From assembly GCF_006345805.1 (NCBI RefSeq), contig NW_021834368.1, positions 1 through 49,309 of the forward strand: a stretch of DNA of 49,309 bases. Direction: 5' to 3'. Shown here piece by piece: positions 10,365 to 49,309 of this stretch. The stretch comes from Octopus sinensis. Lineage: Eukaryota. The translations under genes and the position numbers were made by a program. Numbering within the stretch: position 1 is the first letter of the stretch; every line of letters begins with the position of its first letter. Below the pieces are notes generated by a model that was not told the origin of the DNA, made no database searches, and was given only the letters and a program-made list of their open reading frames with translations.

Positions 10365-11811
10365 GTCAAAGAAAATCAATCAGCCTCAAAACGGACAAAA
10401 AACTTTTCTATGGCTTGCTACATATTGACCACAGTGATAATGAGTGATTTTAAAAATCCGTTGAAAGCAATGAGGTCAAAAATGTTTGGAAGAGGAATTT
10501 ATGAAAATAGGAAGGGGACACTATGCATGCTGTATGAATATGGATGCGGGTGTGTTTGCTCTGGTTAATAAGATTTATTGCTTATGTGTGTGTATGAGTG
10601 TGTGTATATAACTGCATTTATGTCTATGTATGTATATGTGTGTAAACATGTATAGGTAGGGGCCGGTTGTCAGATAAATATAGCAGTAAACCGAGAAATT
10701 TTTGTCTGTGTGTTTGATTGAGTGTATGACAGAGACAGATAAGTAGAAAGAGAGAGGGAAAGGTAGAGAGGAAGGGATGAACATACGCCAGTGACATATA
10801 GTATCATTGTTATTGATAACTTCTCTGTTTTAGTATTTAATTTCACGTCCCTTTTATGTCTAATTCGTTACATAAAACAATGATACTATATATATATATA
10901 TGTATATATATATGTATATATATATATATATATAATATATATATATAATATATATATATATAATGTTAATGCGCTAAATTTGTGTTTTTTACGTACATAT
11001 TGTGTGCGCCAGAATTCCATGAAATAGAGGGATGGGGAAGATGAACGAGAGAGAACATGGGTGTGCGTGTTTTAAAAATCTGGGTTTTTTTTCTTGTTTT
11101 GTCCTTTTGCATTTTTTAGATGACCTTTGTAAGAAATGGAAAAAGAGAGAAAGAAACAGACGGATGGATTTTCAATATTAGGCGTGTTGCTATGTATACG
11201 CACACACATATCTGTAAGTTTAGTAAAAATAGAAAAGCGCACAAATACGTTGGTAAAATGGCTATTTACAAAGTTTTACTTACCTGGAATTTTGAAAGGA
11301 CAAAACAGACAAAACTGACAGCTACAATCAGTAAACAAACTTTAAAACAACTGTCTTTTCTAAATGTAGACATTTTAAGATCAGGCAAGTACTGAGATTT
11401 ATAACGTTGATACGGTCTGCTGGATTTTACGATCTAAATGCAGTTTTGTGAATAATTTACACTTTCTGATATATAAAATTAGTACAAATATATTTTCAGA
11501 TTCTCCACTATTCCACTTAAAATATTTGTCTTATTTTTCTGAAATTTAAAATAGTTTTACAGTCATCTGCGTAGATGTGTTGTTCTCCCCTGGAAGTATT
11601 GTTCAACAATGAGCGAAAAGGAGACGACTGCTTTTACACAGGTAAAACAGTGACAGGATTTGTCGCGATCGATTATTATTTAAATAAGCTTATCAGGGTG
11701 TTGTATGAAGTTTGCTTTCTAACAATATGATTCTTGGTTCAGTTCCACGGCGTTGCACCTTAGACATGTGTACTGGTGATGGATTTCGTAGCAGAAATTG
11801 AAAGAAGCCTG

Positions 11812-11869
<58 letters not shown>

Positions 11870-12096
11870 CATACATATGTAAGATCGAAGATGAAAATTT
11901 TTGCTGGGAACTCAAGAGATATAGCTTATACACACATTTCCCATTTTTTAAAATCTACGACCGCATTGTTGTTTTCATTACGAAACTTCGTAACAAATCA
12001 GTGGTGGCTAGAATTTCTATAGAAAATCTCTTGCGATAAACATAACAAGTCATATATATATACATACATGCATATATATATGTATATGTATATATC

Positions 12097-12169
<73 letters not shown>

Positions 12170-12239
12170 TTCCCAACCACATGTTTCAAGGTTCATATAT
12201 ATATTTGTGTGCTTGTGTTTTTGCTCCACTTCGCTTGAC

Positions 12240-12390
12240 AACCAAAGTTTGTGTGTTTATGTCCCCTCAACTTAGCGGTTCCGCAATAGCAACCAATAGA
12301 ATAAGTTATAGACTCTGAAAGAATAAGTCGATTTATTCTGTTACAGGCGGGATTCCAGTATGGCAGCAGTCAAATGATCAATGAATGTCG
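12240..12390 (+). mobile_element. Degenerate 3' half of a tRNA-SINE
   Basis: gtttatgtcccc..cttagcggtt...gaataag...ggcgggattccagtatggcagcagtcaaatga resembles 27020-27157. Confidence 0.55.
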
Positions 12391-12480
12391 ATAGATTTGA
12401 AAGCCTGTTCTTGCCTTAGCACCAGCTGCAAGAGAACCTTACTGATTTTGTCGACAGCCGCATTACATAATCACTGACTG

Positions 12481-12820
12481 TTGCTAAAGTTTTGTGCAGT
12501 ATTAAATAAATTAACGACTAACGAAATCTAACTATAAACATCTAAAGGAACACAAACACAAAACTAACAAGAATATAACTAGGTTTAAGGTATATTTTTT
12601 TAAGCTACAATATATCTTCACAGATAAATACATTTTTTTATCTTAAATATTTGACATAATAAATGTATTGATATAATGCATTAAGTATCAGATATATTTT
12701 AGCTTAAAAAAATATAACTTTAACCTAGTTATACTCTTGTTAGTTTTGTGTTCCTGTATATGTTTATAGTTAGATTTCGTTGGGCGTTAATTTATTTAAT
12801 ACTGCACAAAACTTTAGCAA
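12481..12820. repeat. AT-rich palindrome (arms 12481-12607 / 12700-12820)
   Basis: ttgctaaagttttgtgcagt...taagcta versus tagctta...actgcacaaaactttagcaa; mirrored at ~47450-47810. Confidence 0.85.
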
Positions 12821-12969
12821 TGTAACTGATATATTTATATGTAACTGATCCTAATGTTTTAAGTATCAGATTTCGTTGGGCGTTAATTTATTTAATACTG
12901 CACAAAACTTTAGCAATGTAACTGATACATTTATATGTAACTGATCCTAATGTTTTAAGTATCAGATTT
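12772..12969 (+). repeat. Two-copy 96-bp tandem repeat overlapping the palindrome right arm
   Basis: agatttcgttgggcg... recurs at 12772 and 12868; agattt again at 12964. Confidence 0.9.
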
Positions 12970-13475
12970 AGTTAATGGAGTTTCGTCTATAAGAAAAATC
13001 ATTATTTTATGTATTTTTTAATAAATATTGTTTAACTCTAATAAGTATAATATAGTTAGATACACATATAAGATTGACCAAAATTGGAATAATTTAACAA
13101 AAGAAATAAAATGATAAAGTAGAATAAGAGATAAAGAGATAAAATACTATAGAGCTGGAAAAGGATGTTGTCTTGGATGAGATGGTAGTGGTCATAAATA
13201 ACTTCTTAGTTTGACCACTCGTTGAATTATATATTAAGGTTGTAATTTTATATCATTGTGATGAATGGTCAGTTTACCCAAACACACCACTAAAAATTAC
13301 TAGCTTTATAAACTTACAGATTTTTTCTGTACATGTTCTCATTGAAGTTAAAAAAGTTATTCTGTTGGATGAATTTTGGTCCCTCAATGATGAATGTGGC
13401 TAAACCTTAAGGGTGGATGCCCTATCAGTATTTGCAAAGGGAAGCCATCCTTCTCATCTGCAACCTGACGTTATA

Positions 13476-13519
13476 CACACGGACCGAGTTTCTGGATATT
13501 GACCCGTCATCAGCGTGTG
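13476..13519 (-). ncRNA. Minimal type-I hammerhead ribozyme (mirror of 46752-46795)
   Basis: cacacg-CTGATGA-cggg tcaata tcca-GAAA-c tcg g-TC-cgtgtg: 6-bp stem I, GUC site, C.A mismatch at the base of stem II. Confidence 0.75.
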
Positions 13520-13989
13520 ACAATCACCGGTGGTTGATGTGACGAGGTTCCAAATGAATATATATATATATCCTTTTTCCAGTGACTTTCATGAGTTTGT
13601 ATGTGTGCGTGTGTGTATGCGTGTGTGTGCTTGTTTGTCCGTATTACCTATGTACCTATCTATCTGTTTAGCCACATTTACCCTTTTTCGAGATCAGTGA
13701 CTTTTCGTCACTGGAAAAAGGATATATATGCCAAGTTGAAGAATGTTACAGAGTTGAAATATGCAAATTATATTAAATTGTACCTTGAGATAAAAGAAAT
13801 AGGTCCTATACACTATAGATCTTTCCTCCAATTAAATCTAGCATTGGATTTCCAACTGCATTGGATTTCCAAGTGCATCACCATGTAATACGAGAGAAAA
13901 AACCCAGCTTTTACAAGCTCCCTCAACAGTACCAATCCTAACAAGTATGTTAGTGAACGTGAGATGGGTGCTATTGTCAACAACAATCT

Positions 13990-14570
13990 GCATTGGACAA
14001 ACTACGTCTAAGATAGTCAAGAAAGCTGAGAGTGTCTCAGCATCACTCAGTAAGATCTATGTCAGCCACCCTAGAGCTATCTAATTAAAGCTGCATATAT
14101 CTATGGTACGTCAACATTTAGAGTTTGCATCACCAGTTTAGAATTTTTATCTTGCTCGGCACATAAGTCTCCTGAAAACTGTTCAGAAACGTGCAAACAG
14201 ACGAATATCTGCCGTACACTGAACATCTTGCTTCCGTGAACATGGACACATTAAAGTTCCGACATCGGGCAACTGACTTTCTAGATACCTACAAGATTAT
14301 TCATTATCTTTCCAACAACGTTTGGCATTCCAGAAGTCTAACACTTGTGGACATGCTTACAGAACACAGCACCCATTATTTTCAAAAACATTTTTTTACG
14401 CTCACAATTGTAGAAGCATGGAATAAATTACCTCCATCTGTTATCGGCTGTCAAGTCACTACGTCCTTCAAAACTTCTATTCTTCTTGAAGTTCGCTTAC
14501 AGTACACCTGACGCCCCTTACACCTGTTTCTGCTTCTTCCTTTTTTTCTAAAAGACTCTTACGGTGTTCA
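13990..14570 (+). mobile_element. Old CR1/L2-group LINE 3' remnant
   Basis: Degenerate motifs VRQHLEFASP, VQKRA-like, DTYKII, VEAWNKLPPSV; mirrored at ~45720-46300. Confidence 0.65.
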
Positions 14571-14675
14571 CTTACTGTGCATATTCTATGTACGATTCAT
14601 ACAGTTTTGAATACTTTTTCTGATGAGTTGTAGTGTACCTGAGCACTATATAAAGTTCATCATTATATAAATATG

Positions 14676-14724
<49 letters not shown>

Positions 14725-14760
14725 ATGTGTGTGTGTGTGTGTGTGTGCGTGCGTGTAAGT

Positions 14761-14840
<80 letters not shown>

Positions 14841-14956
14841 CATATATACTTACATACATATATATATGTATGTATATAATGAAGAAATAAGTGATATAGA
14901 TATCCACTTTATACAACTCAACCAATTAGCGCTCTGATAGAGCTTCAGGAATATAA

Positions 14957-15406
14957 AATTAAGGAGGAGAGAAAACGCCATTTCTTCTAAAGCTTTAACC
15001 TTATGATTCTATTAACTATGATGAGAGATATATAAAGTATTGCGATGGTTGGATTTAGCTCGCCCATAGCATCCTATATGTTTTCGAAACGGCCGTAAGA
15101 CTTTATACATAGATTTTATACATGTTCCAGATTTCTTATGAATCATTTTATATTCACTTTATCATCCTCTTCATTGATTGAAATTTGAACATTCGGACTT
15201 CGCAAGTACATTTATGGACTTATATTTTAATATATTTATATCTATGAATTTTTATGTGTTTATAAATTTTTATATGTCTATGAAATCTTATATATCATAC
15301 AGATGAATGCATCTATATATGTATTTATACCATGCAGAATTTCGTTAATATGGATTGAATGAATATATACATCGACCTTTGAATTTGTTTTCTCTCCTCC
15401 TTAATT
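14957..15406 (+). mobile_element. ~450-bp pLTR-like unit with 19-bp inverted ends and an internal HHR remnant
   Basis: aattaaggaggagagaaaa (14957-14975) / ttttctctcctccttaatt (15388-15406); ATGATGA...CGAAAC-ggcc-GTA at ~15012-15103. Confidence 0.55.
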
Positions 15407-15827
15407 ATATATATTTATATTTATATTTATATTTATATATATATATAATGTACATACATATGTGTGTGCGTTTATATTTGTTCCCCTTCACACACCACTT
15501 GGCGATTAGTTTTTGTACATTATCTTAGCAATTCATCAAAAGAGAACGATAAAGTAAGTACCAAACTTTTAACAAGTAAGTACAGTTACTGATTTGTTAG
15601 ACAATACTCAACAAGAAAGTACTCTTAGCATGACCGCAGTGCGACGATTGAAAGATGCAAAATATGAAAAATAAAAGAAGAAAACAGTGTTTTTCAGATG
15701 AAGTCACTTATAAATTTGTTCAGCATCATATACATAAAATATTGCCTTATTATTTTCACCATCAGAAGGACAATGAATTTGTGACTGTTCGGTCTGTAAG
15801 CAACAGTACAGCTGTTCACAATCTGCA

Positions 15828-16354
15828 ATTGTAACTATTGTCACTATTATAACAGAAATACGAGGTCTGATCAATAAGTATCCAGGCTGTTGTCATAGTA
15901 TCGAGCTAAAGTAGGCAGAGTAAAGCCGCTTGGCACAGACATTGAACGCAGCTGTGCAAAAACTTGTCGATATTGACAAACGTTCTGCACTATGTAGTGA
16001 AAGTAAGCTAGAACGTCAAATCGTAGTACATATGTACAACAGAGTTCATGGTCTGATGAATAAGTATCTGGAATGTTGCTATAGTAACAAAGCTAAAGTA
16101 CGTAGAGTAAATCCGCTTGGCACAGATCGATCTTGAATTCTGCTGTACATATGCACAACGATTTAACGTTCTAGCTTACTTTCACTACATAGTGCAGAAC
16201 GTTTGTCAATATCGACAAGTTTTTGCACAGCTGCGTTCAATGTCTGTGCCAAGCGGCTTTACTCTGCCTACTTTAGCTAGATACTATGACAACAGTCTGG
16301 ATACTTATTGATCAGACCTCGTATTTCTGTTACAATAGTGACAATAGCTACAAT
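15828..16354. mobile_element. Mariner/Tc1-derived palindrome (MITE-like core 15861-16321 between TA dinucleotides)
   Basis: TA-CGAGGTCTGATCAATAAGTATCC...GGATACTTATTGATCAGACCTCG-TA; ~220-bp arms; spacer 16049-16133 is a diverged third copy of the terminus. Confidence 0.75.
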
Positions 16355-16440
16355 AGTGAATTCTTTCATCCTGTAGCTCTGCTGGTATATTTGAGAAAAA
16401 TTATATTAATATATCTTGTCTGTTGAAAATCCACATTTTT

Positions 16441-16522
16441 TGCAACTAAAGATGGCAATTTAAATTGATGTAATGCCTGCATTGTTCGATTAAATGGAAC
16501 CGCCTGAAACGGTCGTATTGCA
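16441..16522 (+). ncRNA. Degenerate type-I hammerhead ribozyme (CTAAAGA)
   Basis: tgcaa-CTAAAGA-tggc...gcct-GAAA-c ggtc g-TA-ttgca: 5-bp stem I, G5A core change. Confidence 0.6.
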
Positions 16523-16678
16523 TTAATACCTGAAATCCTGTTACTTATTTGATTATATATATATATATATATAAATTCAGCGTGAGTACTTGATAATTGT
16601 AAGCACCTGTATATACCATTTAGTGGTGTAGGTGGTGGAGTAAATTAATCAAAATAAAAACATGATGCCAAGAATTCA

Positions 16679-16756
16679 GCGGTACATATCTTTCGGGCCT
16701 TTATTAGACGAATTTATAACAATGCATAATGTGTGTCTATGGCCTTCTTCAGCCGC
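16679..16756 (-). ncRNA. Degenerate type-I HHR in the left pLTR arm
   Basis: gcgg-CTGAAGA-a ggcc..tagac/gtcta..ggcc c-GAAA-g atat g-TA-ccgc; position 15.2 is G instead of C. Confidence 0.6.
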
Positions 16757-17851
16757 GCACAATTACTACTTCAAGGACATGTATTACATCATAAATTCTA
16801 CGTTGGGGATGCAAATCCTCTCAGTCGCGAACGACATAGTGGGGCACCAGCACAAAAATGAAGCGTCCATCTCGTCTTTCACTCAATGTAGAATGAGGGA
16901 GCTTGGATGTTGAGGTAATATAAATATATAAATGAATAAATAAATATATAAATACACACAGACGTGAAAGAACCTGGTAATAAAAATAAATAGGGATAAA
17001 TACAGAGGGGCGAGAATTAAGGACGAAAGATAAAAAAATATAAAAATATAAAAAGATAAAAAATAAAAAAATAAAAAATATAAATGTAGAAATATAAAAA
17101 TATAAAAATATAAAGAAATATAAAAATATAAAAGAATATAAAAATATAAAAATATAAAAATATAAAAGGATATAAAAATATAAAAATATAAAAGAATATA
17201 AGGATAAGGGATATAAAGTGGTTACGAACTAACAAGGTGGTCAGAAAGATGACATATTCTGGTTGTAGAAGCCTAAGCGGTGGGTGTCATAAACCAACTG
17301 GAACGTCTGGGTACCCAGTATATGGTAGGTTAGGGCTGTCTGGTTTGTGGTTAAACCGCTTATCTATTTCCTCGTAAATTGTCTAGTGGTCAACATGTAC
17401 ATACGTACACGCATGGATACATATACACATATACACGCATACATATACGCACGCATACACATCCACATACATACATGCATACATACGTACTCTCGTGTAA
17501 AAATATACACATACAAACGGGAAAAGGCGCATATAGTTGGGTACACGAACTGACACGCATACGTACGTATATACATATACGTACATGCGTACATACAGAC
17601 ACACTCGCACTCACACTCATTCACAAGACAAAGTAAATCTCTATGCATATGGGCAAAAATATGCATGCCCACACCCACACACATGGGGGAGTAGATCCTT
17701 ATGCATATACACAAAAATATGCATATATGCATATGCACAGATACAGGTAAAACAAGTAGATCCATTCTCGCACACAGGCAAGATACGGAATTATAATGGG
17801 CACAAAAGGTAGACATGAAAGTAAAAAACCTGACGGTAAGAAATTATAACA

Positions 17852-17890
<39 letters not shown>

Positions 17891-18057
17891 TACACACACA
17901 CACACGTATATATATATACAGACACACACATATATACACACACGCATATATACATACACATGGACCCACACACACACACACCCACACGCACATACATATA
18001 TCTGTGTGTCTATATATGCATATACACATACATATATATATACACAGACGTACGCAC

Positions 18058-18113
<56 letters not shown>

Positions 18114-19638
18114 ATGTATATATACACATACACACACATACATATTCATACTCACACACATATACAGATATACATACAAATACATAGATAAGGATATAAG
18201 GAAAAAGAACTAAAAATAGACATACATAGAGAAAAAAAATTGATAAAATAGGGGTAAAAATAGAAGTAAAAATAAGGATAAAGTTAAAAATTAGAAATAA
18301 AAAAATAAAATAAAACAAAGGTAATCGAGTAAAGATTAACATGAAATGAAGGTAAAATAAAAGGTGGTTGCAAAGGTAAAGGTACAGGTGTGTGTTAAAG
18401 GTGACCACCCAGGGGCGGGGAGGGGAACTGAGGCAGGGAGGAGGGGAAAATTACGGAGTAGTCATAAGTGAAAGGGTGGGAAGCGGGGTTCGGGGGTGTT
18501 CGCTCAACATCAAAGCTAGAAATGGAAAAAGGTATAGATATAGGGAAATAAAATATATATATAGGAAAAAGATAGATATAGAAAAGAAATATATAGGAAA
18601 AAAATATATATAGGAGACAAAATATATATATAGGAAAAAAAACGGGATGTGCTGGAGCTGACAAGTTGTACTTGGATGGGAGGATATTGCATGGGGAAGT
18701 AGGTATAATAGCCTAAGCTTTGTAGTATTTGAAAGAGGGCCTGAATTCAGATCTTTTATTAATTAGTTTGTGTTTCTCCTTGAATTTCAAGATATTCAGG
18801 AGTTCCACACAACATAGCTGGCATCCTGTTCTATTATTTAAATAAGGTGCAGCTGATCCGATGATGGACCACCTGAGTTTGAAACCTATGCTATTGTATT
18901 TTAATTCCAAATTTTTTTAGATAGGGAGGTGCTGCTAGCCTTGTGTCTATGCCTGAATGAGGACCGTGGTTGTAGTATCTGGATTTCCAGGAGGTCGAGC
19001 AACCTATGTAGGTGGAGATTGTCGGGCTAAAAACGTAATATATTCATGTGAGGTGAGTACCCAGTTTAACACACTCACCAGACGTTCCAGTTGGTTTATG
19101 ACACCCACCGCTTAGGCTTCTACAACCAGAATATGTCATCTTTCTGACCACCTTGTTAGTTCGTAACCACTTTATATCCCTTATCCTTATATTCTTTTAT
19201 ATTTTTATATTTTTTATATCCTGTTATATTTTTATATTTTTTTATATTTCTTTATATTTTTTTATATTTTTTTATATTTCTTTATATTTTTATATTTTTA
19301 TATTTCTACATTTATATTTTTTATTTTTTTATTTTTTATCTTTTTATATTTTTATATTTTTTTATCTTTCGTCCTTAATTCTCGCCCCTCTATCTTTATC
19401 CCTATTTATTTTTATTACCAGGTTCTTTCACGTCTGTGTGTATTTATATATTTATTTATTCATTTATTTATTTATATTACCTCAACATCCAAGCTCCCTC
19501 ATTCTACATTGAGTGAAAGACGAGATGGACGCTTCATTTTTGTGCTGGTGCCCCACTATGTCGTACGCGACTGAGAGGATTTGCATCCCCAACGTAGAAT
19601 TTATGATGTAATACATGTCCTTGAAGTAGTAATTGTGC

Positions 19639-19716
19639 GCGGCTGAAGAAGGCCATAGACACACATTATGCATTGTTATAAATCCGTCTAATAAAGGCCC
19701 GAAAGATATGTACCGC
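19639..19716 (+). ncRNA. Same degenerate HHR in the inverted pLTR arm
   Basis: Mirror of 16679-16756 with the same defects. Confidence 0.6.
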
Positions 19717-19779
19717 TGAATTCTTGGCATCATGTTTTTATTTTGATTAATATATATATATATATATATATTAACTAAC

Positions 19780-20067
19780 TTTAACCATATGAACGTTGTA
19801 ACATTTGGTCAACAGAATATTTCTATCACTTATATAAATGCAAGCATTATTCTTTTCTATCGAGAATATTCGGAAGTTAAGATCCATCAATTTCTTGACA
19901 ACATTAAGAGCATTACGGTGAACGTTCCACTTCGATGCTTCAGAAAAATATGAGTGAAATTCAACTAGTAACTGTTTCACGTGATCTAGTTCACCATCAG
20001 ACATTGCCTTAATCAAGGAGTTCCATTCATCGTTTTCTACATCCATTTTCAAGATAGATATGTTCTT
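19780..20067 (-). CDS. Candidate internal host exon (288 nt, phase 0/0), ankyrin-like helical sequence
   Basis: Polypyrimidine acceptor ttttcattcttcag, open 96 codons KNISILKMDVENDEWNSLIKAMSDGELDHVKQLLVEF..., donor aaa|GTTAGT. Confidence 0.45.
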
Positions 20068-23840: not shown

Positions 23841-23922
23841 GCTTTCAAAATGTGACCTAGTGTGTACCGTTGGAAATTTTTTTTCCTCTGTCTTCCTTTC
23901 TCTGGATCTTTCCTTCACCTAT

Positions 23923-36604: not shown

Positions 36605-36689
36605 AATACGTATATATAAATATATAAGAAAATATACATACATATACATATATATATACATATATATATACATATACAAGGGAAGCCTT

Positions 36690-36933: not shown

Positions 36934-36934
36934 G

Positions 36935-37600: not shown

Positions 37601-37672
37601 ATATAAAATTGTTCCAGGTAGTAAACTTTATAATATTAATAAGGCCTCTAAATTAGTAATGATAAACTATGA
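37471..37672. repeat. Hairpin with ~68-bp arms at the inner edge of the giant inverted repeat
   Basis: tcatagtttatc...tggaacaatttta versus taaaattgttccagg...gataaactatga. Confidence 0.88.
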
Positions 37673-39079: not shown

Positions 39080-39130
<51 letters not shown>

Positions 39131-39730
39131 GAGTGAGAGAGCAGTTCATGCCATCAAAGTGACACTGGGGTAAAATATACGAAGCCCAATATACCCATCA
39201 TGACTACCCGTCTGATAAAGGTACACCAGGCACATGCATCAGAACCATATGTGCGCGACATGGTGATCTCATATCAAGATAAACAGCACATGATTTTGCA
39301 GGTGGGGCCCAGTTAGAATTTTCTTCAGGTTCAGTAGCCCATCCTGCTCAAAAGGTCCCTGAATAAGGGTTGCTTTAGGATGTTGAACGAAACACCTATG
39401 TTTCCAGAGGTGAATTATTCAAACCCCAAAGAATCCCTCTCAACACACGGCCATGATGCTCCACCACTACTTCTGCTCGTGATCAGAGATGCACATATCG
39501 TCAGCCACTAAGGGACATGCTCAACTGGTTAAGGCCAAACAACTGACAAGCAAATCTGTGGTATTGAGCAGAATATTTGCTGTAGCCCATCTTTTATACC
39601 AAGACAAAACAATGTACATGATAACACTTCCAATCAGTTAAGATCAGAAGCCATGAGAGCCACTGCCTGGTACTGCATCAGTGAGAGCCACTGCCTGGTA
39701 CTGCATCAGTTATTATTATTATTATTATTA

Positions 39731-39782
<52 letters not shown>

Positions 39783-40203
39783 CATACACTCAACAGATTA
39801 GACGGTTGGAAAAGAAAAGAAACCTAACATCGGGCTACAACAAGTAGATTTAGATGCCAAGAATCTTCATAAGTACTTTAGCTGTCCCTAATAACACTGT
39901 TTTCCTCAGCTGTACTTCACTGGGTTTTTTACCTATTTCCTTTATCCAGCTGTTCACATCTTTAGGGCTAGTTCCCAATGCACCTATAACTACTGGGATA
40001 AATTTTACCCGCTCTTTCCATAGTCTTTGTAATTCATTATCTAGGTTCTGTTACTTTGCTATTCTGCCTATGCTTCACATGGGACAGAGAAACTCACTGT
40101 ATTAAATTAATCACATCAGATTGTTCATTTACAAAACCCTGTAATAGAGATGTGAGTGTTTTTTTCATTTTTGCGTAATTTAGACGACAATTTATTCACC
40201 GCA

Positions 40204-40254
<51 letters not shown>

Positions 40255-40353
40255 TTAATCCAAACAAGAAAGCACAAAAAAAAACACAACAACGCGAGGA
40301 CGTGGAACAAATATAGTATTATTGGACGCTCAGGAAAGAAGGAAAGAAGGAGG

Positions 40354-40388
40354 GTTTAACGTTTCGAGCGGAGCTCTTCGTCGGAAAC
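40354..40388 (-). ncRNA. Minimal type-I HHR, CCGACGA variant, perfect stem II
   Basis: gttt-CCGACGA-a gagc tcc gctc-GAAA-CG-TT-aaac. Confidence 0.65.
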
Positions 40389-40479
40389 ATAGGAGAAGGA
40401 AAGATCTAGAGAAAGGAAGACAGAGGAAAAAAATCGCCAACGGTACGCACGAGGTCACATTTTGAAAGCAAAAATTTGA

Positions 40480-40685
40480 AACCCCAAATGTCGCCAGATC
40501 AATCCAGCCAAATCCGAGATCGGTCTGGTGAGCAAACACATATTAAGAGATATCAATAACAGCATAAGAAGACCCACCAACCTTTCCCTGTAACGCAGCA
40601 CCAGCGAAGTGACCGCATGGTTTAACACCTACAAGGGAAGAGGCAAAGCAAGGTTCACCCAATTTGTTATAGTCGATTTTTACCC

Positions 40686-40733
<48 letters not shown>

Positions 40734-43700
40734 ACGGAAAACCCAGGGTAATCCCATGAATGAGCATTCCCCAGTTTTAAAATATACACTGCTCTACAAC
40801 TTAGAGCGTGCTTCTTCTCCGGATTTATGTTTTCTACGAACGATTCTTTTCGGTCCCTGGCCAGAGTTTTTCACAAAGACAACGTGGTTTCTGTTAAACA
40901 GATGACCAGTGCCGTGCATCTACATATATGCGGAAACCACGGGTCTCTCATAAATATGGAATGATTTGAGCTCAGATACTCCACCAAAAACATCCCCACG
41001 CCATCCAACGAACTATACACCCGCATGCTGCTGGAAAAGATAATGGACGTGATTAGGCGTATGAGGTAGAATGCTTTCTGCTACGACCTAGCCGCACCAT
41101 CCCCGGAGGGTAACAACTATAGCAGTAGATCGAGAAAACACCCACCCAGAATCAAGGACCTCGAATCCTTGGAGGCGGACCTGCTGGGAATCATCCCAAA
41201 ACAGAAATTCCGAAAGTCCCTTTACTCCTTCCAACGCAAGCTCCGGGCCGATATTACATTATTAAAACTCAGATAAGTCCCTAATCTTCTCCGATAGACA
41301 CCCTAGAGTATGATAGACTACTAGAAAATAACGGCACACAAAATTATAGGATCTCCCCCACACAAATATAGCGACATTAACAGTGAAGCCAAAAAATTAG
41401 CTAACGAACAAGAGATAGAAGACAAGGTAGAGATCCTTGCTAAAAGAAACGCTTTCATCACCATAAAAGATTATAAACGGAACTTTTCCTCAAACCTCAA
41501 ATGTCGCCAGATCAATCCAGCCAAATCCGAGATCGGTCTGGCGAGCAAACACATATTAAGAGATATCAATAACAGCATAAGGAGGCCCACCAACCTTTCC
41601 CTGTAAAGCAGCACCAGCGAAGTGACCGCATGGTTTAACAGCTACAAGGGAAGAGGCAAAGCAAGGTTCACCCAATTTGCTATAGTCGATCTTTACCCGT
41701 CTATATCAAAAGGGCTTCTGGTCAAGGCGCTTTCTTTCACTAGGGGCTTCGCCAGCATTAGCGACAGAGATGTAGAAATTATCATGCATGCCAGAAAGAC
41801 AGTGCTGTTCAACAAAGGTTCGGCATGGGTCAAGCAATCCGACCCTACGGGCTCCTTTGACGTAGCGATGGGAGTCTACGACGGCGCTGTTGTATGCGAT
41901 CTCATCGGGTTGTATATTCTAGATAACCTTAAGAAAAAGTTTCTCTTTGTCCGCTTTTTGCAACTACAGAGGCAGCAAGCGGACATACATTAGGCAGGAT
42001 TAAAAAAGACACTTAATCAGTACGCTAGCCTCCTTGAGATTGAAGATCAGCATAAAGACCAACTTCACGTTCAACTTGGGCGCCGGTACTTACAGGCCCT
42101 ATCGCAAACCAAACGAGAAGCTAACGCACATCAACATAGCCTCCTGCCACCCACCCATCCTGTTCAAGAACCTCGTAGAGGGTGTTTAGTAAGAAGATTA
42201 CGAGCCTTTCCTCCAACCAAGAGGCTTTCGATGCAGCGGCCCCGTACTATAACGAGGCCCTCGTTGACAACGGACTTAGGGACCGCATCACCTACATGCC
42301 AAAACCCAACAGCCGCAGAAATACCATTTATCTTGCTTCCTCACCACTTCTCCCTTAAAACAATAACGTCCGTAAGGAGACTATTCATTAAGTTAGTAGA
42401 CAAGCATTTCACTAGCTCTCATAGGTGCGGCTCATCTTCAACAGGCACAACGTTAGGGTCTCGTTTAGCTATGCCCCCAGTTGTAAGAGTATTGTAGTTA
42501 GTGCCCCTAAGCCACAGGAAGAGGCAGGTTGTTCATACAGGGCCCGCAAGAGTTGCTCGACAGGAAGCTTCTGCGAACCCAAAGGGGTCGTTTATCAAGC
42601 CGAAGTATTAGTGAACCCTGGCAATACCACCGGCAGAAGTAATAGCAGCCAATAGTTATGAGAACAGAACCAACAACACCACCACCATCGCCGCAGTTGA
42701 CAGCATTAACAACGTTAGCAACAGCAGCATCACAGACAGCATTGGCAGTCCTCCCGTTGGCAGCATCACTGACAACAACAACAGCAGCATCACCACCAAC
42801 ACCAACCTTACCAATAACCAATAGAAGCAGCAACAGATCCAGTGCCAACGTCAGCCGTAACAGCAGTAGCAGCAGTAGCAGCAGCAGCAGCAGCAGTGGC
42901 CCTAGCAGAAGCACCGGCGTAACCACGACTAATGTCACCCCTAGCAACAGTGGCAGCTCCTCCACCATTGGTGAAGACCGCAATAATAACAACAATAACA
43001 GCAATATTAACAACAACAGCGCCTTAACCGTAACCGGCAGTGGCGGTAGCATTGCTGACGCCACCACTACCTCTAAGAACGTCAACGCCAGCAGAGCCAG
43101 CCAGCTGAAACATTCCGTGAGGAATAGGAATTGGAAGGATAGCTATTTCCAAACAACAGCAGCAACAGCGACAACAGGTGGAACATCGACAACACGCGCA
43201 GTGGCGATAATATTACCGTCGTCACCACCACATTCAGCGACGCTAACACCAGCAGCCCCAGCTCCAGTAACAACAATAACAGCAGCAACAGCAGGAGGCG
43301 AAATGCCCCAGTGGTTAGGGCAGCGGACACGCGGTCGGAGGATCGCAGTATCGATTCCCAGACCGGGCGTTGTGTGTGTTTATTGAGCGAAAACACCTAA
43401 AAGCCCCACGAGGCTCCGGCAGGGGGTGGTGGCGACTCCTGTTGTACTCTTTCGCTCCAACTTTCTCTCACTCTTTCTTCCTGTTTCTTGTCCTCGACTT
43501 CCTACGCAACCGCTGAGCCTTGATGCGCATTCATCCATCCGTCGATGCTCTCGGTGTCGGGGGTTGACCTGCTTTCTCTTCTGCGGGTCTTACGAATAGC
43601 AAAGGACCACGTTTCGGACTTCTCCCACTAATGGGACGAAGACCGCTTCGCTCAACAAACAAGCAGCAACAACAGCAACAAGTGCAGCACCGACAACATG

Positions 43701-44200
43701 CGCCTACGGAAATGCATTGAATGTACTGGGAATTCTCTCAAGCAGCGTATCTCCAGCCATAGGTCCTCCTTCAGAGTTCTGGAAAGGAGGTACGTAACAT
43801 CGCTGGCCAATCACGTCTGGCAACTAAGAGACAATGGGATCTCATGGTCGATCTCATGGAAATTACTAGAGACCCCAGGCCCCTACATCAACGGGACGAA
43901 GCGTTGCAAGTTATGCATAGCTGAACGCGCGAGCATCCTAAAACACTCACTCGAACCAGGGAGCACCCCTAACTCCAGAACGGGGATTTTAATTGTGTAT
44001 TGATATATGAAGATTGTTACAGAGTTGAATTGTGATCCTTTTCGTTAGGTCTTCCAGTCAAATGAAGGCTTGTGGCTTAGTGATTAGGGTAGACGTCTTA
44101 CGCTCGATAGGTTGTGAGCTCGGTTTCTGGTGGCGTGTTGTGTCCGTGAACAAGACGCTTTATATCATGTTTCTATAGTCCACTGGGCAACGTTGTTGTT
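40480..44200 (+). mobile_element. Decayed Penelope-like element, right copy, with extra upstream RT sequence
   Basis: KNIPTPS, TIKDYKRNF, ORF 41622-41993 RT core, GIY-YIG 42500-44003; 40480-40690 duplicates 41490-41703. Confidence 0.9.
43294..43660 (+). mobile_element. tRNA-SINE (mirror of 21611-21976)
   Basis: Same head and body. Confidence 0.75.
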
Positions 44201-44841
44201 TATGTTTGGAACATTAGTATTAACATTTCGAGAGCTTTTTGACCTCATCATCAAAATGAAATAATGGTAATTATAACGTTGTTCGCACACTATGCAATAT
44301 GTTGCGAAAGATCATGGCGATACTGCTATAACTATATTTTAAAACATCTGTATTTAATTTCTCTATAAAATTGTAGTATAATCAACTAATGATTGTTGTT
44401 TTCTATTTAGTATTATTTCTTGTACTGTATAATAATGTATTGTGGTGACCTCTCGATTAAAAAGGAGACGAGTAATCATGGAATGTTCACCAATAACAAA
44501 ACGCAAACCAACATTCATTGTGCTTCTGATGGTGAAAAAAATAAGGCAATATTTAATGTATATGATGTTGAACAAATTTATAAGTGACTTCATTTGAAAA
44601 ACACTGTTTTCTTCTTTTATTTTTCATATTTTGCATCTTTCAATCGTTGCACTGCGGTCATGCTAAGAGTACTTTCTTGTTGAGTTTTGTCTAAGAAATC
44701 AGTAACTGTACTTACTTGTTAAAAGGTTGGTACTTACTTTATCGTTCTCTTTTGATGAATTGCTAAGATAATGTACCAAAACTAATCGCCACGTGATGTG
44801 TGAAGGGGAACAAATATAAACGCACACACATATGTATGTAC

Positions 44842-44882
<41 letters not shown>

Positions 44883-45179
44883 GGAGGAGAGAAAAGAAAT
44901 TCAAAGATCGATGTATATATTCATTCAATCCATATTAACGAAATTCTGCATAGTATAAATACATATATAGATGCATTCATCTGTATGATATATAAAATTT
45001 CATAGACATATAAATATTTATAAACACATAAAAATTCATAGATATAAATACATAAAAATATAAGTCCATAAGTGTACTTGCGACGTCCGAATGTTTAAAT
45101 TTCAATCAATGAAGTGGATGATAAAGTGAATATAAAATGATTCATAAGCAATCTGGAGCATGTATAAAATCTATGTATA

Positions 45180-45270
45180 AAGTCTTACGGCCGTTTCGAA
45201 AACATATAGGATGCTATGGGCGAGCTAAATCCAACCATCGCAATACTCTATATTTCTCTCATCAGAGTTA
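45180..45270 (-). ncRNA. Type-I HHR with intact core but weak stem I
   Basis: ct-CTGATGA-gagaaatata...tatatgttttc-GAAA-c ggcc g-TA-ag; left-arm copy has ATGATGA. Confidence 0.55.
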
Positions 45271-45430
45271 ATATAATCATTTAGAAGAAATGGCGTTTTC
45301 TCTCCTCCTTAATTTTATATTCCTGAAGCTCTATCAGAGCGCTAATTGGTTGAGTTGTATAAAGTGGATATCTATATCACTTATTTCTTCATTATATACA
45401 TACATATATATATGTATGTAAGTATATATG

Positions 45431-45510
<80 letters not shown>

Positions 45511-45543
45511 ACTTACACGCACGCACACACACACACACACACA

Positions 45544-45594
<51 letters not shown>

Positions 45595-46751
45595 CATATT
45601 TATATAATGATGAACTTTATATAGTGCTCAGGTACACTACAACTCATCAGAAAAAGTATTCAAAACTGTATGAATCGTACATAGAATATGCACAGTAAGT
45701 GAACACCGTAAGAGTCTTTTAGAAAAAAAGGAAGAAGCAGAAACAGGTGTAAGGGGCGTCAGGTGTACTGTAAGCGAACTTCAAGAAGAATAGAAGTTTT
45801 GAAGGACGTAGTGACTTGACAGCCGATAACAGATGAAGGTAATTTATTCCATGCTTCTACAATTGTGAGCGTAAAAAAAATGTTTCTGAAAATAATGGGT
45901 GCTGTGTTCTGTAAGCATGTCCACAAGTGTTAGACTTCTGGAATGCCAAACGTTGTTGGAAAGATAATGAATAATCTTGTAGGTATCTAGCAAGTCAGTT
46001 GCCCGATGTCGGAACTTTAATGTGTCCATGTTCACGGAAGCAAGATGTTCAGTGTACGGCAGATATTCGTCTGTTTGCACGTTTCTGAACAGTTTTCAGG
46101 AGACTTATGTGCCGAGCAAGATAAAAATTCTAAACTGGTGATGCAAACTCTAAGGGTTGACGTACCATAGATATATGCAGCTTTAAATAGATAGCTGTAG
46201 AGTGGCTGACATAGATCTTACTGGGTATTGCTGAGACACTCTCAGCTTTCTTGACTATCTTAGACGTAGTTTGTCCAATGCAGATTGTTGTTGATAATAG
46301 CACCCATCTCACGTTCACTAACATACTTGTTAGAATTGGTACTGTTGAGGGAGCTTGTAAAAGCTGGGTTTTTTCTCTCGTATTACATGGTGATGCACTT
46401 GGAAATCCAATGCAGTTGGAAATCCAATGCTAGATTTAATTGGAGGAAAGATCTATAGTGTATAGGACCTATTTCTTTTATCTCAAGGTACAATTTAATA
46501 TAATTTGCATATTTCAACTCTGTAACATTCTTCAACTTGGCATATATATCCTTTTTCCAGTGACGAAAAGTCACTGATCTCGAAAAAGGGTAAATGTGGC
46601 TAAACAGATAGATAGGTACATAGGTAATACGGACAAACAAGCACACACACGCATACACACACGCACACATACAAACTCATGAAAGTTACTGGAAAAAGGA
46701 TATATATATATATTCATTTGGAACCTCGTCACATCAACCACCGGTGATTGT

Positions 46752-46795
46752 CACACGCTGATGACGGGTCAATATCCAGAAACTCGGTCCGTGTG
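46752..46795 (+). ncRNA. Minimal type-I hammerhead ribozyme; predicted cleavage after C46789
   Basis: cacacg-CTGATGA-cgggtcaatatcca-GAAA-ctcg-GTC-cgtgtg. Confidence 0.75.
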
Positions 46796-48124
46796 TATAA
46801 CGTCAGGTTGCAGATGAGAAGGATGGCTTCCCTTTGCAAATACTGATAGGGCATCCACCCTTAAGGTTTAGCCACATTCATCATTGAGGGACCAAAATTC
46901 ATCCAACAGAATAACTTTTTAAACTTCAATGAGAACATTTACAGAAAAAAATCTGTAAGTTTATAAAGCTAGTAATTTTTAGTGGTGTGTTTGGGTAAAC
47001 TGACCATTCATCACAATGATATAAAATTACAACCTTAATATATAATTCAACGAGTGGTCAAACTAAGAAGTTATTTATGACCACTACCATCTCATCCAAG
47101 ACAACATCCTTTTCCAGCTCTATAGTATTTTATCTCTTTATCTCTTATTCTACTTTATCATTTTATTTCTTTTGTTAAATTATTCCAATTTTGGTCAATC
47201 TTATATGTGTATCTAACTATATTATACTTATTAGAGTTAAACAATATTTATTAAAAAATACATAAAATAATGATTTTTCTTATAGACGAAACTCCATTAA
47301 CTAAATCTGATACTTAAAACATTAGGATCAGTTACATATAATGTATCAGTTACATTGCTAAAGTTTTGTGCAGTATTAAATAAATTAACGCCCAACGAAA
47401 TCTGATACTTAAAACATTAGGATCAGTTACATATAAATATATCAGTTACATTGCTAAAGTTTTGTGCAGTATTAAATAAATTAACGCCCAACGAAATCTA
47501 ACTATAAACATATACAGGAACACAAAACTAACAAGAGTATAACTAGGTTAAAGTTATATTTTTTTAAGCTAAAATATATCTGATACTTAATGCATTATAT
47601 CAATACATTTATTTTGTCAAATATTTAAGATAATAAAATAGAGCAAAGTGATAGAAAAATGTATTTATCTGCGAAGATATATTGTAGCTTAAAAAAATAT
47701 AACTTTAACCTAGTTATACTCTTGTTAGTTTTGTGTGTTTGTGTTCCTTTAGATGTTTATAGTTAGATTTCGTTAGTCGTTAATTTATTTAATACTGCAC
47801 AAAACTTTAGCAACAGTCAGTGATTATGTAATGCGGCTGTCGACAAAATCAGTAAGGTTCTCTTGAAGCTGGTGCTAAGGCAAGAACAGGCTTTCAAATC
47901 CATCGACATTCATTGATCATTTGACTGCAGCCATACTGGAATCCCGCCTGTAACAGAATAAATCGACTTATTCTTTGGGAGTCTATAACTTATTCTATTG
48001 GTTGCTATTGCGGAACCGCTAAGTTAAGGGGACATAAACACACAAACTTCGGTTGTCAAGCGAAGTGGAGCAAAAACACAAGCACACAAATATATATATG
48101 AACCTTGAAACATGTGGTTGGGAA

Positions 48125-48196
<72 letters not shown>

Positions 48197-48423
48197 GATA
48201 TATACATATACATATATATATGCATGTATGTATATATATATGACTTGTTATGTTTATCGCAAGAGATTTTCTATAGAAATTCTAGCCACCACTGATTTGT
48301 TACGAAGTTTCGTAATGAAAACAACAATGCGGTCGTAGATTTTAAAAAATGGGAAATGTGTGTATAAGCTATATCTCTTGAGTTCCCAGCAAAAATTTTC
48401 ATCTTCGATCTTACATATGTATG

Positions 48424-48482
<59 letters not shown>

Positions 48483-49309
48483 ATATGACAGGCTTCTTTC
48501 AATTTCTGCTACGAAATCCATCACCAGTACACATGTCTAAGGTGCAACGCCGTGGAACTGAACCAAGAATCATATTGTTAGAAAGCAAACTTCATACAAC
48601 ACCCTGATAAGCTTATTTAAATAATAATCGATCGCGACAAATCCTGTCACTGTTTTACCTGTGTAAAAGCAGTCGTCTCCTTTTCGCTCATTGTTGAACA
48701 ATACTTCCAGGGGAGAACAACACATCTACGCAGATGACTGTAAAACTATTTTAAATTTCAGAAAAATAAGACAAATATTTTAAGTGGAATAGTGGAGAAT
48801 CTGAAAATATATTTGTACTAATTTTATATATCAGAAAGTGTAAATTATTCACAAAACTGCATTTAGATCGTAAAATCCAGCAGACCGTATCAACGTTATA
48901 AATCTCAGTACTTGCCTGATCTTAAAATGTCTACATTTAGAAAAGACAGTTGTTTTAAAGTTTGTTTACTGATTGTAGCTGTCAGTTTTGTCTGTTTTGT
49001 CCTTTCAAAATTCCAGGTAAGTAAAACTTTGTAAATAGCCATTTTACCAACGTATTTGTGCGCTTTTCTATTTTTACTAAACTTACAGATATGTGTGTGC
49101 GTATACATAGCAACACGCCTAATATTGAAAATCCATCCGTCTGTTTCTTTCTCTCTTTTTCCATTTCTTACAAAGGTCATCTAAAAAATGCAAAAGGACA
49201 AAAGAAGAAAAAAAACCCAGATTTTTAAAACACGCACACCCATGTTCTCTCTCGTTCATCTTCCCCATCCCTCTATTTCATGGAATTCTGGCGCACACAA
49301 TATGTACGT

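What the first reader, a model, noticed from the sequence alone, without database searches (positions are those of the whole stretch)
10991..49309. Giant inverted duplication with reciprocal private indels
Seen: arms 10991-29418 and 37672-49309+ are highly similar (eye estimate mid-to-high 90s %). Left-only blocks: 15779-20755 (~5.0 kb) and ~24560-27830 (~3.3 kb, bounded by (AAT)n). Right-only blocks: 38542-38923 (~0.38 kb, GAT microhomology) and ~40690-41703 (~1.0 kb). Small private deletions occur on both sides, e.g. only the left keeps the RT YRDK segment. Inference: indels on both arms argue for a real, post-duplication-diverged palindrome rather than a fold-back read. Each arm records events missing from the other.
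Basis: seen in the sequence. Interest (0 to 1): 0.72.

Follow-up and report, generated by a model that had tools for sequence, protein, structure and literature searches.

The report
Ancient inverted duplication in octopus DNA
At least 18 kb of repeat-rich octopus DNA was copied in reverse orientation about 8 kb from itself; the structure is real, because an independent Octopus vulgaris chromosome assembly has the same junctions, but it is an ordinary kind of genome rearrangement.

Summary
Window 10991-29418 and 37672-49309 are inverted copies: 10,368 alignable bases, 1.95% substitutions, separated by an 8,253-bp single-copy spacer. The window end cuts the right arm, so 10991 is not a biological boundary.

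The window is octopus DNA. A 30.5-kb stretch of the O. vulgaris chromosome OX597822.1 carries the inner right arm, the spacer and the left arm. Both inner junctions are base-for-base identical there.

Each arm is closer to its O. vulgaris counterpart (1.6-1.7%) than to its partner arm (3.6-4.5%). Three of the four large arm-specific blocks could be compared; two are shared by both genomes. The arms are therefore old paralogs, not mis-joined haplotypes or a fold-back read.

Divergence is mosaic: tracts of 0.7-1.25 kb with at most one substitution sit in a 3-4% background. One 899-bp tract was homogenised after the two genomes split, which indicates arm-to-arm gene conversion.

A LINE ORF1 runs unbroken across the left junction. 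The right junction cuts it beside a 69-77-nt hairpin with 1-2 nt of microhomology. This fits fold-back or template-switch duplication, but that mechanism is inferred.

It is a new example of a known kind, of modest interest.

The parts
10991..29418 (.). Left arm (18,428 bp as visible). The outer limit is set by the window end on the partner side, so it is not a real boundary.
   Evidence: Minus-strand BLAST chain to 49309-37672. The orthologous left arm is in O. vulgaris L002 from 10396 to about 21197.
37672..49309 (.). Right arm (11,638 bp visible), the inverted copy, cut by the end of the window.
   Evidence: Its inner 3.4 kb is orthologous to L002 1-2928.
29419..37671 (.). Single-copy spacer of 8,253 bp (7,467 bp in O. 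vulgaris). It holds LINE fragments on both strands, (TA)n arrays, a 164-bp perfect palindrome, a 651-bp foldback element and an unclassified retroelement-like ORF.
   Evidence: No inverted match between its two halves. Pfam zf-RVT at 30070-30756(-) and weak RVT_1 at 31850-32392(+). Collinear with L002 2929-10395.
29123..29702 (-). LINE ORF1 remnant (RRM-type domain) that runs collinearly from the spacer into the left arm, with a 1-nt frameshift at about 29420. It marks the left junction as ancestral contiguous sequence.
   Evidence: 99 family members found; one of them has a CCHC zinc knuckle. In tblastn, seven members (P0154, P0162, P0173, P0195, P0204, P0212, P0243) align on both sides of 29418-29421 without loss of residues.
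37463..37680 (.). Hairpin at the spacer side of the right junction. Arms 37471-37539 and 37604-37672 have 2 mismatches in 69 nt, with a 64-nt loop. The right arm of the large repeat starts at its last base, with 1-2 nt (A or GA) of shared sequence.
   Evidence: the repeat finder pair I6 and the sequence read directly. It is identical in O. vulgaris except in the loop. In the right arm the ORF1 homology begins only at 37674-37680.
15782..20755 (.). Left-only block 1 (4,974 bp). It contains a hairpin (15828-16354), a nested inverted repeat (16641-17310 and 19078-19754), (CA)n/(TA)n arrays and a methyltransferase-like exon (19774-20091, minus strand). A 3-bp TTG repeat sits at its edges and there are no terminal inverted repeats, so a deletion in the right arm is more likely than an insertion.
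   Evidence: The 19078-20755 part is present in the O. vulgaris left arm.
24610..27747 (+). Left-only block 2 (3,138 bp), embedded in (AAT)n. It is a 5'-truncated LINE (an intact 584-aa RT ORF at 24655-26409, with an (ATA)n tail) plus a 768-bp tandem duplication. It is present in the left arm and absent from the right arm in both genomes.
   Evidence: Pfam RVT_1 6.7e-22 and zf-RVT. BLAST and edge sequences. L002 comparison.
40479..41706 (.). Right-only block: about 800 bp (40694-41491) flanked by 215-bp direct repeats (40479-40693 and 41492-41706). The left arm has one copy of the repeat (23633-23803). It is present in the O. vulgaris right arm and absent from the O. vulgaris left arm.
38525..38924 (.). 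The 'right-only' 0.4-kb block. It is present in both O. vulgaris arms, so it is a deletion in the window's left arm (at 28572/28579, next to (GAA)n).
   Evidence: L002 10396-11841 aligns without a break to window 37672-39130, and L002 1440-2148 aligns to 39130-38420. Edge sequences.
21285..22183 (.). An 899-bp tract identical between the arms (partner 43985-43087), while the O. vulgaris left arm differs at 9 sites. This indicates arm-to-arm gene conversion after the two genomes split.
   Evidence: Under uniformly placed differences the longest identical tract never exceeded 742 bp in 20,000 simulations.
10991..12244 (.). Outermost visible tract with 1 substitution in 1,253 bp (partner 49309-48050). 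It is a candidate recent conversion tract.
   Evidence: No O. vulgaris sequence is available here to give direction.
22497..28572 (.). High-divergence core of the arms (3.3-4.3% substitutions), holding most of the large indels. Here arm-specific substitutions are shared by both genomes.
   Evidence: 22 LL|RR sites against 1 ww|oo; 35 right-arm-specific sites.

Best explanation
This is a genuine, old inverted segmental duplication in an octopus genome (Octopus vulgaris / O. sinensis group). A segment of at least 18 kb of intergenic, repeat-rich DNA was copied in inverted orientation about 8 kb from the original.

Shown:
- Both copies and both inner junctions exist in an independent chromosome-scale assembly.
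- The duplication predates the split of the two genomes.
- Since then each arm has gained private changes. These are a LINE insertion into an (AAT)n array, a tandem duplication, an ~800-bp insert flanked by a 215-bp direct repeat, and deletions with only a few bases shared at their edges or next to microsatellites.
- Arm-to-arm gene conversion has re-homogenised patches of 0.7-1.25 kb, at least once after the split.

Inferred: the origin. The left arm is continuous with the spacer, because a LINE ORF1 reads across the junction. The right arm starts abruptly inside that ORF1, directly after a 69-nt inverted copy of neighbouring spacer sequence, with 1-2 nt of microhomology. This matches a fold-back or serial template-switch (MMBIR-type) event. 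In that model a 3' end first copied 69 nt of its own neighbourhood backwards. It then re-primed 8 kb upstream and copied the left arm backwards, leaving the loop as the single-copy spacer.

No host function is evident.
For: - Inverted chain, all E = 0.
- Taxon: 97% protein hit to O. vulgaris.
- Locus L002 from OX597822.1 is collinear with window 41125 down to 19078 and contains its own inverted repeat.
- Both junctions are identical in the two genomes.
- The two sequences differ by 0.75-1.2% substitutions and several indels of 0.4-0.8 kb, so they are independent.
- The tree is ((wL,oL),(wR,oR)): 22 against 1 informative sites in the mid block and 6 against 1 in the inner block.
- Arm-specific indels are shared by both genomes.
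- Conversion: identical tracts of 899 and 725 bp against a simulated maximum of 742 bp. In the 899-bp tract wL equals wR while oL differs at 9 sites.
- Junction anatomy: ORF1 collinearity across the left junction and truncation at the right junction; hairpin.
- Spacer size, short inverted sequence and microhomology at the novel junction match human fold-back duplications, whose spacers are 766-70,466 bp (median 3.4 kb) with 2-8 bp microhomology (PMC3907307).
Against: - The outer ends of both arms are unseen: the window ends inside the right arm, and L002 covers only its inner 3.4 kb. The full size and the second novel junction are therefore unknown.
- The right junction may be secondary. A later deletion, or the insertion of the retroelement-like sequence at 36918-37565, could have removed a longer original arm.
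- The hairpin could be an intrinsic 5' feature of that element rather than a footprint of the duplication.
- Microhomology of 1-2 nt is barely above chance. In the cited simulation, 13% of random junctions had at least 2 bp.
- Divergence heterogeneity could partly reflect variation in local mutation rate.
- No reads were examined for either assembly.
Confidence: 0.85

Rival explanations
1. Assembly artefact: two haplotypes of one locus were joined head to head through a chimeric or fold-back read or a repeat, so that the 'arms' are alleles.
For: - The right arm runs into the window end, as artefactual hairpin contigs often do.
- Arm divergence in the outer parts (0.9-1.5%) is close to the 1.22% heterozygosity reported for O. 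vulgaris (PMC10700109).
Against: - The same arm-spacer-arm order and identical junctions occur in an independent ONT plus Omni-C chromosome assembly that differs from the window by about 1% and by several indels.
- Each genome carries both arm types, with shared arm-specific substitutions and indels.
- The 3.3-4.3% core divergence is about three times the reported heterozygosity.
- The spacer has no internal mirror symmetry, which a turn-around mis-join would need.
Confidence: 0.03
2. Origin by a small inversion made with staggered breaks. The 8-kb spacer was inverted, and the sequence between one pair of staggered breaks was filled in on both sides, leaving inverted duplicates that flank the inverted segment.
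For: - 17 of 29 Drosophila inversions carry such flanking inverted duplications (PMC1885836).
- Like the fold-back model, this one predicts one ancestral and one novel inner junction, as seen.
- In the nested 0.67-kb inverted repeat of the left-only block, the enclosed segment has opposite orientation in the two genomes. Inversion coupled to inverted repeats therefore does happen in this region.
Against: - A fill-in of at least 18 kb is long for this model.
- The extra 69-nt inverted copy at the novel junction is not predicted by simple end joining.
- The spacer orientation is the same in both genomes available, so no pre-inversion state is known.
Confidence: 0.2
3. Two independent insertions, in opposite orientation, of one large composite mobile unit (a giant transposon or a transduced block).
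For: - The arms are full of transposon debris.
- Several foldback-type elements lie in the window, and one is absent from the orthologous O. vulgaris site, which fits recent mobility.
Against: - The inner end of the left arm is not an element terminus: a LINE ORF1 continues across it into the spacer.
- There is no third copy in the 11-kb left flank or in the extra 8 kb of L002.
- The content is a patchwork of unrelated repeats, microsatellites and unique DNA.
Confidence: 0.04

Closest known systems
Fold-back inverted duplications with a single-copy spacer (human constitutional inv-dup rearrangements; PMC3907307)
   Same: - Inverted copy separated from the original by a single-copy spacer of a few kb (8.25 kb here; 0.77-70 kb, median 3.4 kb, there).
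- One ancestral junction and one novel junction.
- A short inverted sequence and a few bases of microhomology at the spacer/inverted-copy boundary.
   Different: - Those are megabase-scale, recent and pathogenic, and lie next to terminal deletions or translocations.
- This one is interstitial as far as can be seen, at least 18 kb, fixed or at least shared by two genomes, old (3-4% diverged) and without genes.
- Its second junction is unseen.
Inverted duplications flanking inversions made by staggered breaks (Drosophila melanogaster group; PMC1885836)
   Same: Inverted duplicates of formerly unique sequence bracket a short segment. A nested example in the same window shows an orientation difference between the genomes.
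   Different: - There is no evidence that the 8-kb spacer is inverted relative to an ancestor.
- The duplicated length is much larger than typical.
Large palindromes of sex chromosomes and other ampliconic regions, kept nearly identical by arm-to-arm gene conversion (general knowledge, not checked in a paper here)
   Same: Inverted arms with a short spacer. There is evidence of arm-to-arm gene conversion in tracts of about 1 kb.
   Different: - The arms here are 92-98% identical, not above 99.9%.
- 45% of the left arm has no partner.
- No expressed gene family sits in the arms.
- Conversion is patchy and is losing to decay.
Fold-back or hairpin mis-assemblies and haplotig duplications in long-read assemblies
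   Same: An inverted self-match that reaches the end of the sequence.
   Different: - It has a large asymmetric spacer.
- There are kilobase private indels in both arms.
- It is reproduced with identical junctions in an independent assembly.

Membership tests
Inverted segmental duplication (low-copy inverted repeat) | Two copies of at least 1 kb and at least 90% identity, in inverted orientation, on one molecule | tested here: met
   Six collinear minus-strand blocks at 92-98% identity, with 10,368 alignable bases.
Inverted segmental duplication (low-copy inverted repeat) | Content is a stretch of genome, not a single transposable element | tested here: met
   The arms hold several unrelated LINE fragments, microsatellites, tandem repeats and unique sequence. 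The inner end lies inside a LINE ORF1.
Inverted segmental duplication (low-copy inverted repeat) | Present in the organism and not only in one assembly | tested here: met
   Same order and identical junctions in O. vulgaris OX597822.1. Reads were not examined.
Fold-back / template-switch inverted duplication | [quoted passage not shown] | tested here: met
   The 8,253-bp spacer has no mirror symmetry, within the published range.
Fold-back / template-switch inverted duplication | One junction ancestral, the other novel | tested here: met
   The LINE ORF1 is collinear across 29418-29421 and truncated at 37672.
Fold-back / template-switch inverted duplication | Inverted microhomology of at least 2 bp, or a short templated insertion, at the novel junction | tested here: inconclusive
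   1 nt (A) is shared as the sequence stands. It becomes 2 nt (GA) if the 1-nt frameshift in the left arm is a later insertion. A 69-nt inverted copy of adjacent sequence abuts the junction, but it may belong to a retroelement.
Fold-back / template-switch inverted duplication | Second junction at the far end of the inverted copy (telomere, translocation or a switch back) | not testable with these tools
   The right arm leaves the window at 49309, and L002 covers only its inner 3.4 kb.
Staggered-break inversion with flanking inverted duplication | The bracketed segment is inverted relative to the ancestral order | not testable with these tools
   Only two genomes are available and both have the same spacer orientation. 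No single-copy outgroup could be fetched.
Conversion-maintained palindrome (sex-chromosome type) | Arm identity above about 99.9% along the whole arm | tested here: not met
   1.95% substitutions overall, 3.3-4.3% in the core, and 8.1 kb of left-only sequence.
Conversion-maintained palindrome (sex-chromosome type) | Arm-to-arm gene conversion | tested here: met
   The 899-bp tract is identical between the arms, although the ortholog differs at 9 sites. The clustering of differences is beyond all 20,000 simulations.
Assembly artefact (inverted haplotig join or fold-back read) | Arms are alleles, and the junction is absent from independent assemblies | tested here: not met
   Both arm types and both junctions are in each genome. 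Orthologs are closer than paralogs.
Foldback or large-terminal-repeat transposon | Defined termini with target-site duplication, and further copies | tested here: not met
   The inner end is inside an ORF that continues outside the arm. No further copy is in the window or in L002. A genome-wide copy number could not be obtained.

The most novel reading that the evidence does not exclude
The inverted repeat is not just debris but a working locus. One option is that read-through transcription across arm, spacer and arm gives a long hairpin RNA, which feeds small-RNA silencing of the LINE and retroelement families it contains. The other is that the arms act as a recombination switch that flips the 8-kb spacer, as appears to have happened in the nested 0.67-kb repeat. 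Patchy gene conversion would then reflect selection to keep the arms pairable.
Probability: 0.06. Interest if true: 0.55.

Novelty: new member of a known kind. Interest (0 to 1): 0.27.

Why it matters
The practical value is quality control. A suspicious giant self-inverted match at a sequence end, in a genome that is 69% repeats and 1.2% heterozygous, is shown to be biology and not a mis-join, so it should not be purged or broken.

Biologically it is a clean small case study of how an inverted duplication ages in a cephalopod genome. An outgroup gives direction to three of the four large private blocks. The breakpoint can be read at base resolution, and gene conversion and decay can be seen competing.

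It also shows that this region is rich in hairpin-forming sequence on every scale, which may bear on structural instability in octopus genomes. It does not reveal a new mechanism or a new class of element.

Tried and rejected
1. Finding the source by exact protein look-up of window ORFs (24655-26409 and 42658-43386) gave nothing on record.
2. Homologues of the intact LINE RT reach only 57% identity over the full ORF (one 63%-coverage hit reaches 70%), in corals, shrimps, insects and fish. That suggested a crustacean, which was wrong. Cluster look-up, one NCBI contig (L001, 75% DNA identity) and an accession search in papers did not identify the species.
3. The arm's GC-rich ORFs could not be classified: no Pfam family and no word-sharing homologue for 22663-23322(-), no PDB relative for the spacer ORF 36918-37565(-), and only a weak (E = 0.014) similarity between the spacer and arm ORFs. 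I leave the element unclassified and do not endorse the 'RT' label.
4. Rfam found nothing in the window.
5. My first reading of the ORF spanning the left junction, as one open frame, looked contradicted when family homology stopped at the junction. tblastn then showed that homology continues in another frame, so continuity stands.
6. CpG decay does not explain the divergence mosaic: few CpG transitions, and CpG observed/expected is 0.65-0.89 in five of the six blocks.
7. I looked for the outer left arm (10991-16640) and the outer right arm (beyond 44511) in L002. They are not covered, because O. vulgaris has other repeats after the position matching window 18621.

Full report
**Observation**

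A self-comparison of the window gives one collinear chain of six inverted blocks between 10991-29418 (left, L) and 37672-49309 (right, R). BLAST identities are 92-98% and all E-values are 0. Global alignment of the blocks gives 10,368 ungapped columns, 202 substitutions (1.95%, transitions about equal to transversions) and 38 small indels.

- L-only 15782-20755.
- L-only 24610-27747.
- R-only 38525-38924.
- An R-only block of about 1.0 kb, which is about 800 bp flanked by a 215-bp direct repeat (40479-40693 and 41492-41706).

The 'YRDK' codons (23363-23374, minus strand) are removed from R by a 23-bp deletion. The spacer is 8,253 bp (29419-37671).

One correction matters. The alignment runs to the very last base of the window (10991 pairs with 49309). 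The left 'start' at 10991 is therefore only the mirror image of the window end, and the true outer boundary is unknown.

**What the DNA is**

The window is eukaryotic, AT-rich (composition) and full of microsatellites. It carries LINE elements with endonuclease and reverse-transcriptase domains and has no Rfam match.

The intact 584-aa LINE ORF has only distant relatives, at most 57% identity over the full ORF, which did not identify the species. The short ORF 19774-20091(-) has a weak methyltransferase-like Pfam hit. It matched a 'hypothetical predicted protein' of Octopus vulgaris at 97%.

Looking up that protein returned locus L002. This is 30,475 bp of O. vulgaris chromosome OX597822.1 (GCA_951406725.2), positions 25,867,751-25,898,225. 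That assembly was made de novo from ONT, 10x and Omni-C data of one animal. The species has 1.22% heterozygosity and 68.7% repeats, and it split from O. sinensis about 2.5 Mya (PMC10700109).

**The independent assembly has the same structure**

L002 is collinear, in reverse, with window 41125 down to about 19078:
- L002 1-2928 is the inner right arm.
- L002 2929-10395 is the spacer (7,467 bp).
- L002 10396 to about 21197 is the left arm.

L002 has its own inverted repeat at the same places, at 98.3%, 96.4% and 92.6% identity. Both inner junctions are identical base for base in the two genomes.

The two sequences are clearly different genomes. They differ by 0.75-1.2% substitutions and several indels, including a 777-bp piece with a foldback element that only the window has. 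I cannot tell whether the window is O. sinensis or another O. vulgaris haplotype.

**Paralogs, not alleles**

Where all four arms are available, each arm groups with its counterpart in the other genome.
- Mid block (L 23633-24609): 22 sites group L with L and R with R, and 1 site groups by genome. Distances are 1.6-1.7% between orthologous arms and 3.6-4.5% between paralogous arms.
- Innermost block: 6 sites against 1.

With three sequences over 22497-23803, 35 of the differences between the window's arms are R-specific, with O. vulgaris L agreeing with window L.

The large indels tell the same story:
- The LINE-bearing block is in L and not in R in both genomes.
- The 1-kb block is in R and not in L in both genomes.
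- The 0.4-kb 'right-only' block is in both O. vulgaris arms. It is therefore a deletion in the window's left arm after the split.

The duplication thus existed in the common ancestor. Mis-joined haplotypes or a fold-back read would not reproduce this in two assemblies. In the core of the arms, paralog divergence is about 2.5 times ortholog divergence. If the window is O. sinensis, that suggests an age of several million years, which is a rough inference.

**Gene conversion**

Differences between the arms are strongly clustered.
- 10991-12244 has 1 substitution in 1,253 bp.
- 12657-13332 has no substitutions.
- 21285-22183 has no differences at all in 899 bp.
- 15009-15769 and 22497-28572 have 3.3-4.3%.

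With the same number of differences placed uniformly, the longest identical tract averaged 258 bp and never exceeded 742 bp in 20,000 simulations.

In the 899-bp tract the two window arms are identical, while the O. vulgaris left arm differs from both at 9 sites (1.0%, the ordinary ortholog distance). Without homogenisation after the split, about 9-10 differences between the window's arms would be expected there. Arm-to-arm conversion in the window's lineage is therefore the simplest explanation.

The innermost block has few pre-split arm-specific sites (0.7% against 2.3% in the mid block). This suggests an older conversion, or a lower mutation rate, there. CpG decay does not explain the mosaic.

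**Junctions and likely origin**

A sensitive search with the ORF that spans the left junction found 99 relatives of a LINE ORF1-type protein, one of them with a CCHC knuckle. At first the homology seemed to stop exactly at the junction. tblastn then showed that seven family members continue collinearly from 29702 to 29123 with a one-base frameshift at about 29420. The left arm and the left end of the spacer are therefore one old contiguous sequence.

In the right arm the same ORF1 begins only at 37674-37680, which is its downstream half. The right junction is therefore the derived breakpoint.

Directly on its spacer side lies a hairpin. Positions 37471-37539 and 37604-37672 are inverted copies with 2 mismatches in 69 nt and a 64-nt loop. 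The left half is part of an unclassified retroelement-like ORF (36918-37565, minus strand). The hairpin copy and the arm share 1-2 nt (A or GA) at the switch point.

The features of this junction are:
- One ancestral and one novel junction.
- A spacer of a few kb.
- A short inverted piece at the boundary, with minimal microhomology.

This is the anatomy described for fold-back inverted duplications in humans (PMC3907307). It also fits serial template switching during replication. The similar divergence of the small hairpin (2.9%) and the large arms (1-4%) is compatible with one event.

This part is inference. The hairpin may be a feature of the retroelement. The junction may be secondary, and the second junction is unseen.

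The main mechanistic rival is an inversion made with staggered breaks, which also leaves inverted duplicates around the inverted segment (PMC1885836). A single-copy outgroup would decide between them.

**What the arms contain**

The arms contain no convincing host gene.
- The shared part holds LINE fragments, including a YADD motif at 11562-11573(-) and 48727-48738(+).
- It also holds a 96-bp tandem repeat, many microsatellites, and a GC-rich degenerate element (about 21270-24465) that I could not classify.
- L-only block 1 is a patchwork of hairpin, nested inverted repeat, microsatellites and the methyltransferase-like exon. It has no terminal repeats and only a 3-bp TTG at its edges. A deletion in R is more likely than an insertion in L, but this could not be given direction.
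- L-only block 2 is a 5'-truncated LINE with an (ATA)n tail inserted in an (AAT)n array, plus a 768-bp tandem duplication.

**Verdict**

The structure is a real, old, decaying inverted segmental duplication with patchy gene conversion. It is a new example of a well-known kind, in gene-poor repeat-rich DNA.

The interest is modest: it is useful as assembly validation and as a tidy case of breakpoint anatomy and palindrome ageing in a cephalopod. The unexcluded, more novel readings (a hairpin-RNA source or an invertible segment) have no direct support here. No step had to be referred.

Noticed in passing
window 33865-34515 (with flanks about 33751-34527): A 651-bp foldback element (221-nt arms, 99% complementary, 209-nt loop) sits inside a (TA)n array. 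It is absent from the orthologous O. vulgaris site, where the two (TA)n arrays are fused. This looks like a recent insertion of a mobile hairpin element, or a precise loss. It accounts for most of the difference in spacer length.
   Followed up: partly
window 32976-33139: A perfect 164-bp palindrome (78 + 78 nt arms, no spacer) next to (TA)n. It is conserved at 99.6% in O. vulgaris (L002 6604-6856). Long perfect palindromes are usually unstable, so its conservation is curious.
   Followed up: partly
window 16641-17310 and 19078-19754 (spacer 17311-19077); L002 20513-22458: A nested inverted repeat (0.67-kb arms, 96-100% identical) lies inside left-only block 1. In O. vulgaris the enclosed segment (17311-18621) has the opposite orientation relative to the flank at 19755 onward, so the two genomes differ by a small inversion. 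The second arm is not within L002, so a flip by recombination cannot be separated from an origin by inversion plus duplication.
   Followed up: partly
window 15828-16354: Another hairpin, with 226-nt arms at 95% complementarity and a 75-nt loop, at the left edge of left-only block 1.
   Followed up: no
window 19774-20091 (-): An ORF with a weak Methyltransf_22/21 (FkbM-like) hit (E = 0.009 and 0.026). It makes up 90 of the 95 residues of an annotated O. vulgaris 'hypothetical predicted protein'. It is present only in the left arm. It is possibly a gene fragment or pseudo-exon.
   Followed up: partly
window 21270-24465 (-) and 41325-44000 (+); also 36918-37565 (-): A GC-rich degenerate element with ORF pieces (including 'YRDK' and long Ala/Thr/Ser-rich stretches). 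It has no Pfam, word-search or PDB relatives. A distantly similar ORF lies in the spacer. It is unclassified, and the 'RT' label is not verified.
   Followed up: partly
window 7688-9180: A 1.5-kb (TA)n array (760 copies, 79% matches) with GC content down to 17%. It is itself self-complementary and lies just outside the visible left arm.
   Followed up: no
window 1560-7371 (-): Two or more LINE copies with endonuclease and RT domains on the minus strand in the left flank. A related family member (97% to window 1450-2071) lies at L002 24434-25054, so the family is young and active in this lineage.
   Followed up: no
window 39130-39710 compared with L002 1411-1440: About 580 bp between two (TTA)n arrays is present in the window's right arm but missing from the O. 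vulgaris right arm. The matching region of the left arm carries a 768-bp tandem duplication in the window (27184-27647 and 27952-28416) and an extra LINE 3' piece in O. vulgaris (L002 11792-12457). Microsatellite-bounded segments here are gained and lost repeatedly.
   Followed up: partly
L002 27122-27913 and 27993-28789: O. vulgaris carries a further hairpin (about 800-nt arms, 95% identical, about 80-nt loop) in sequence that has no counterpart in the window.
   Followed up: no
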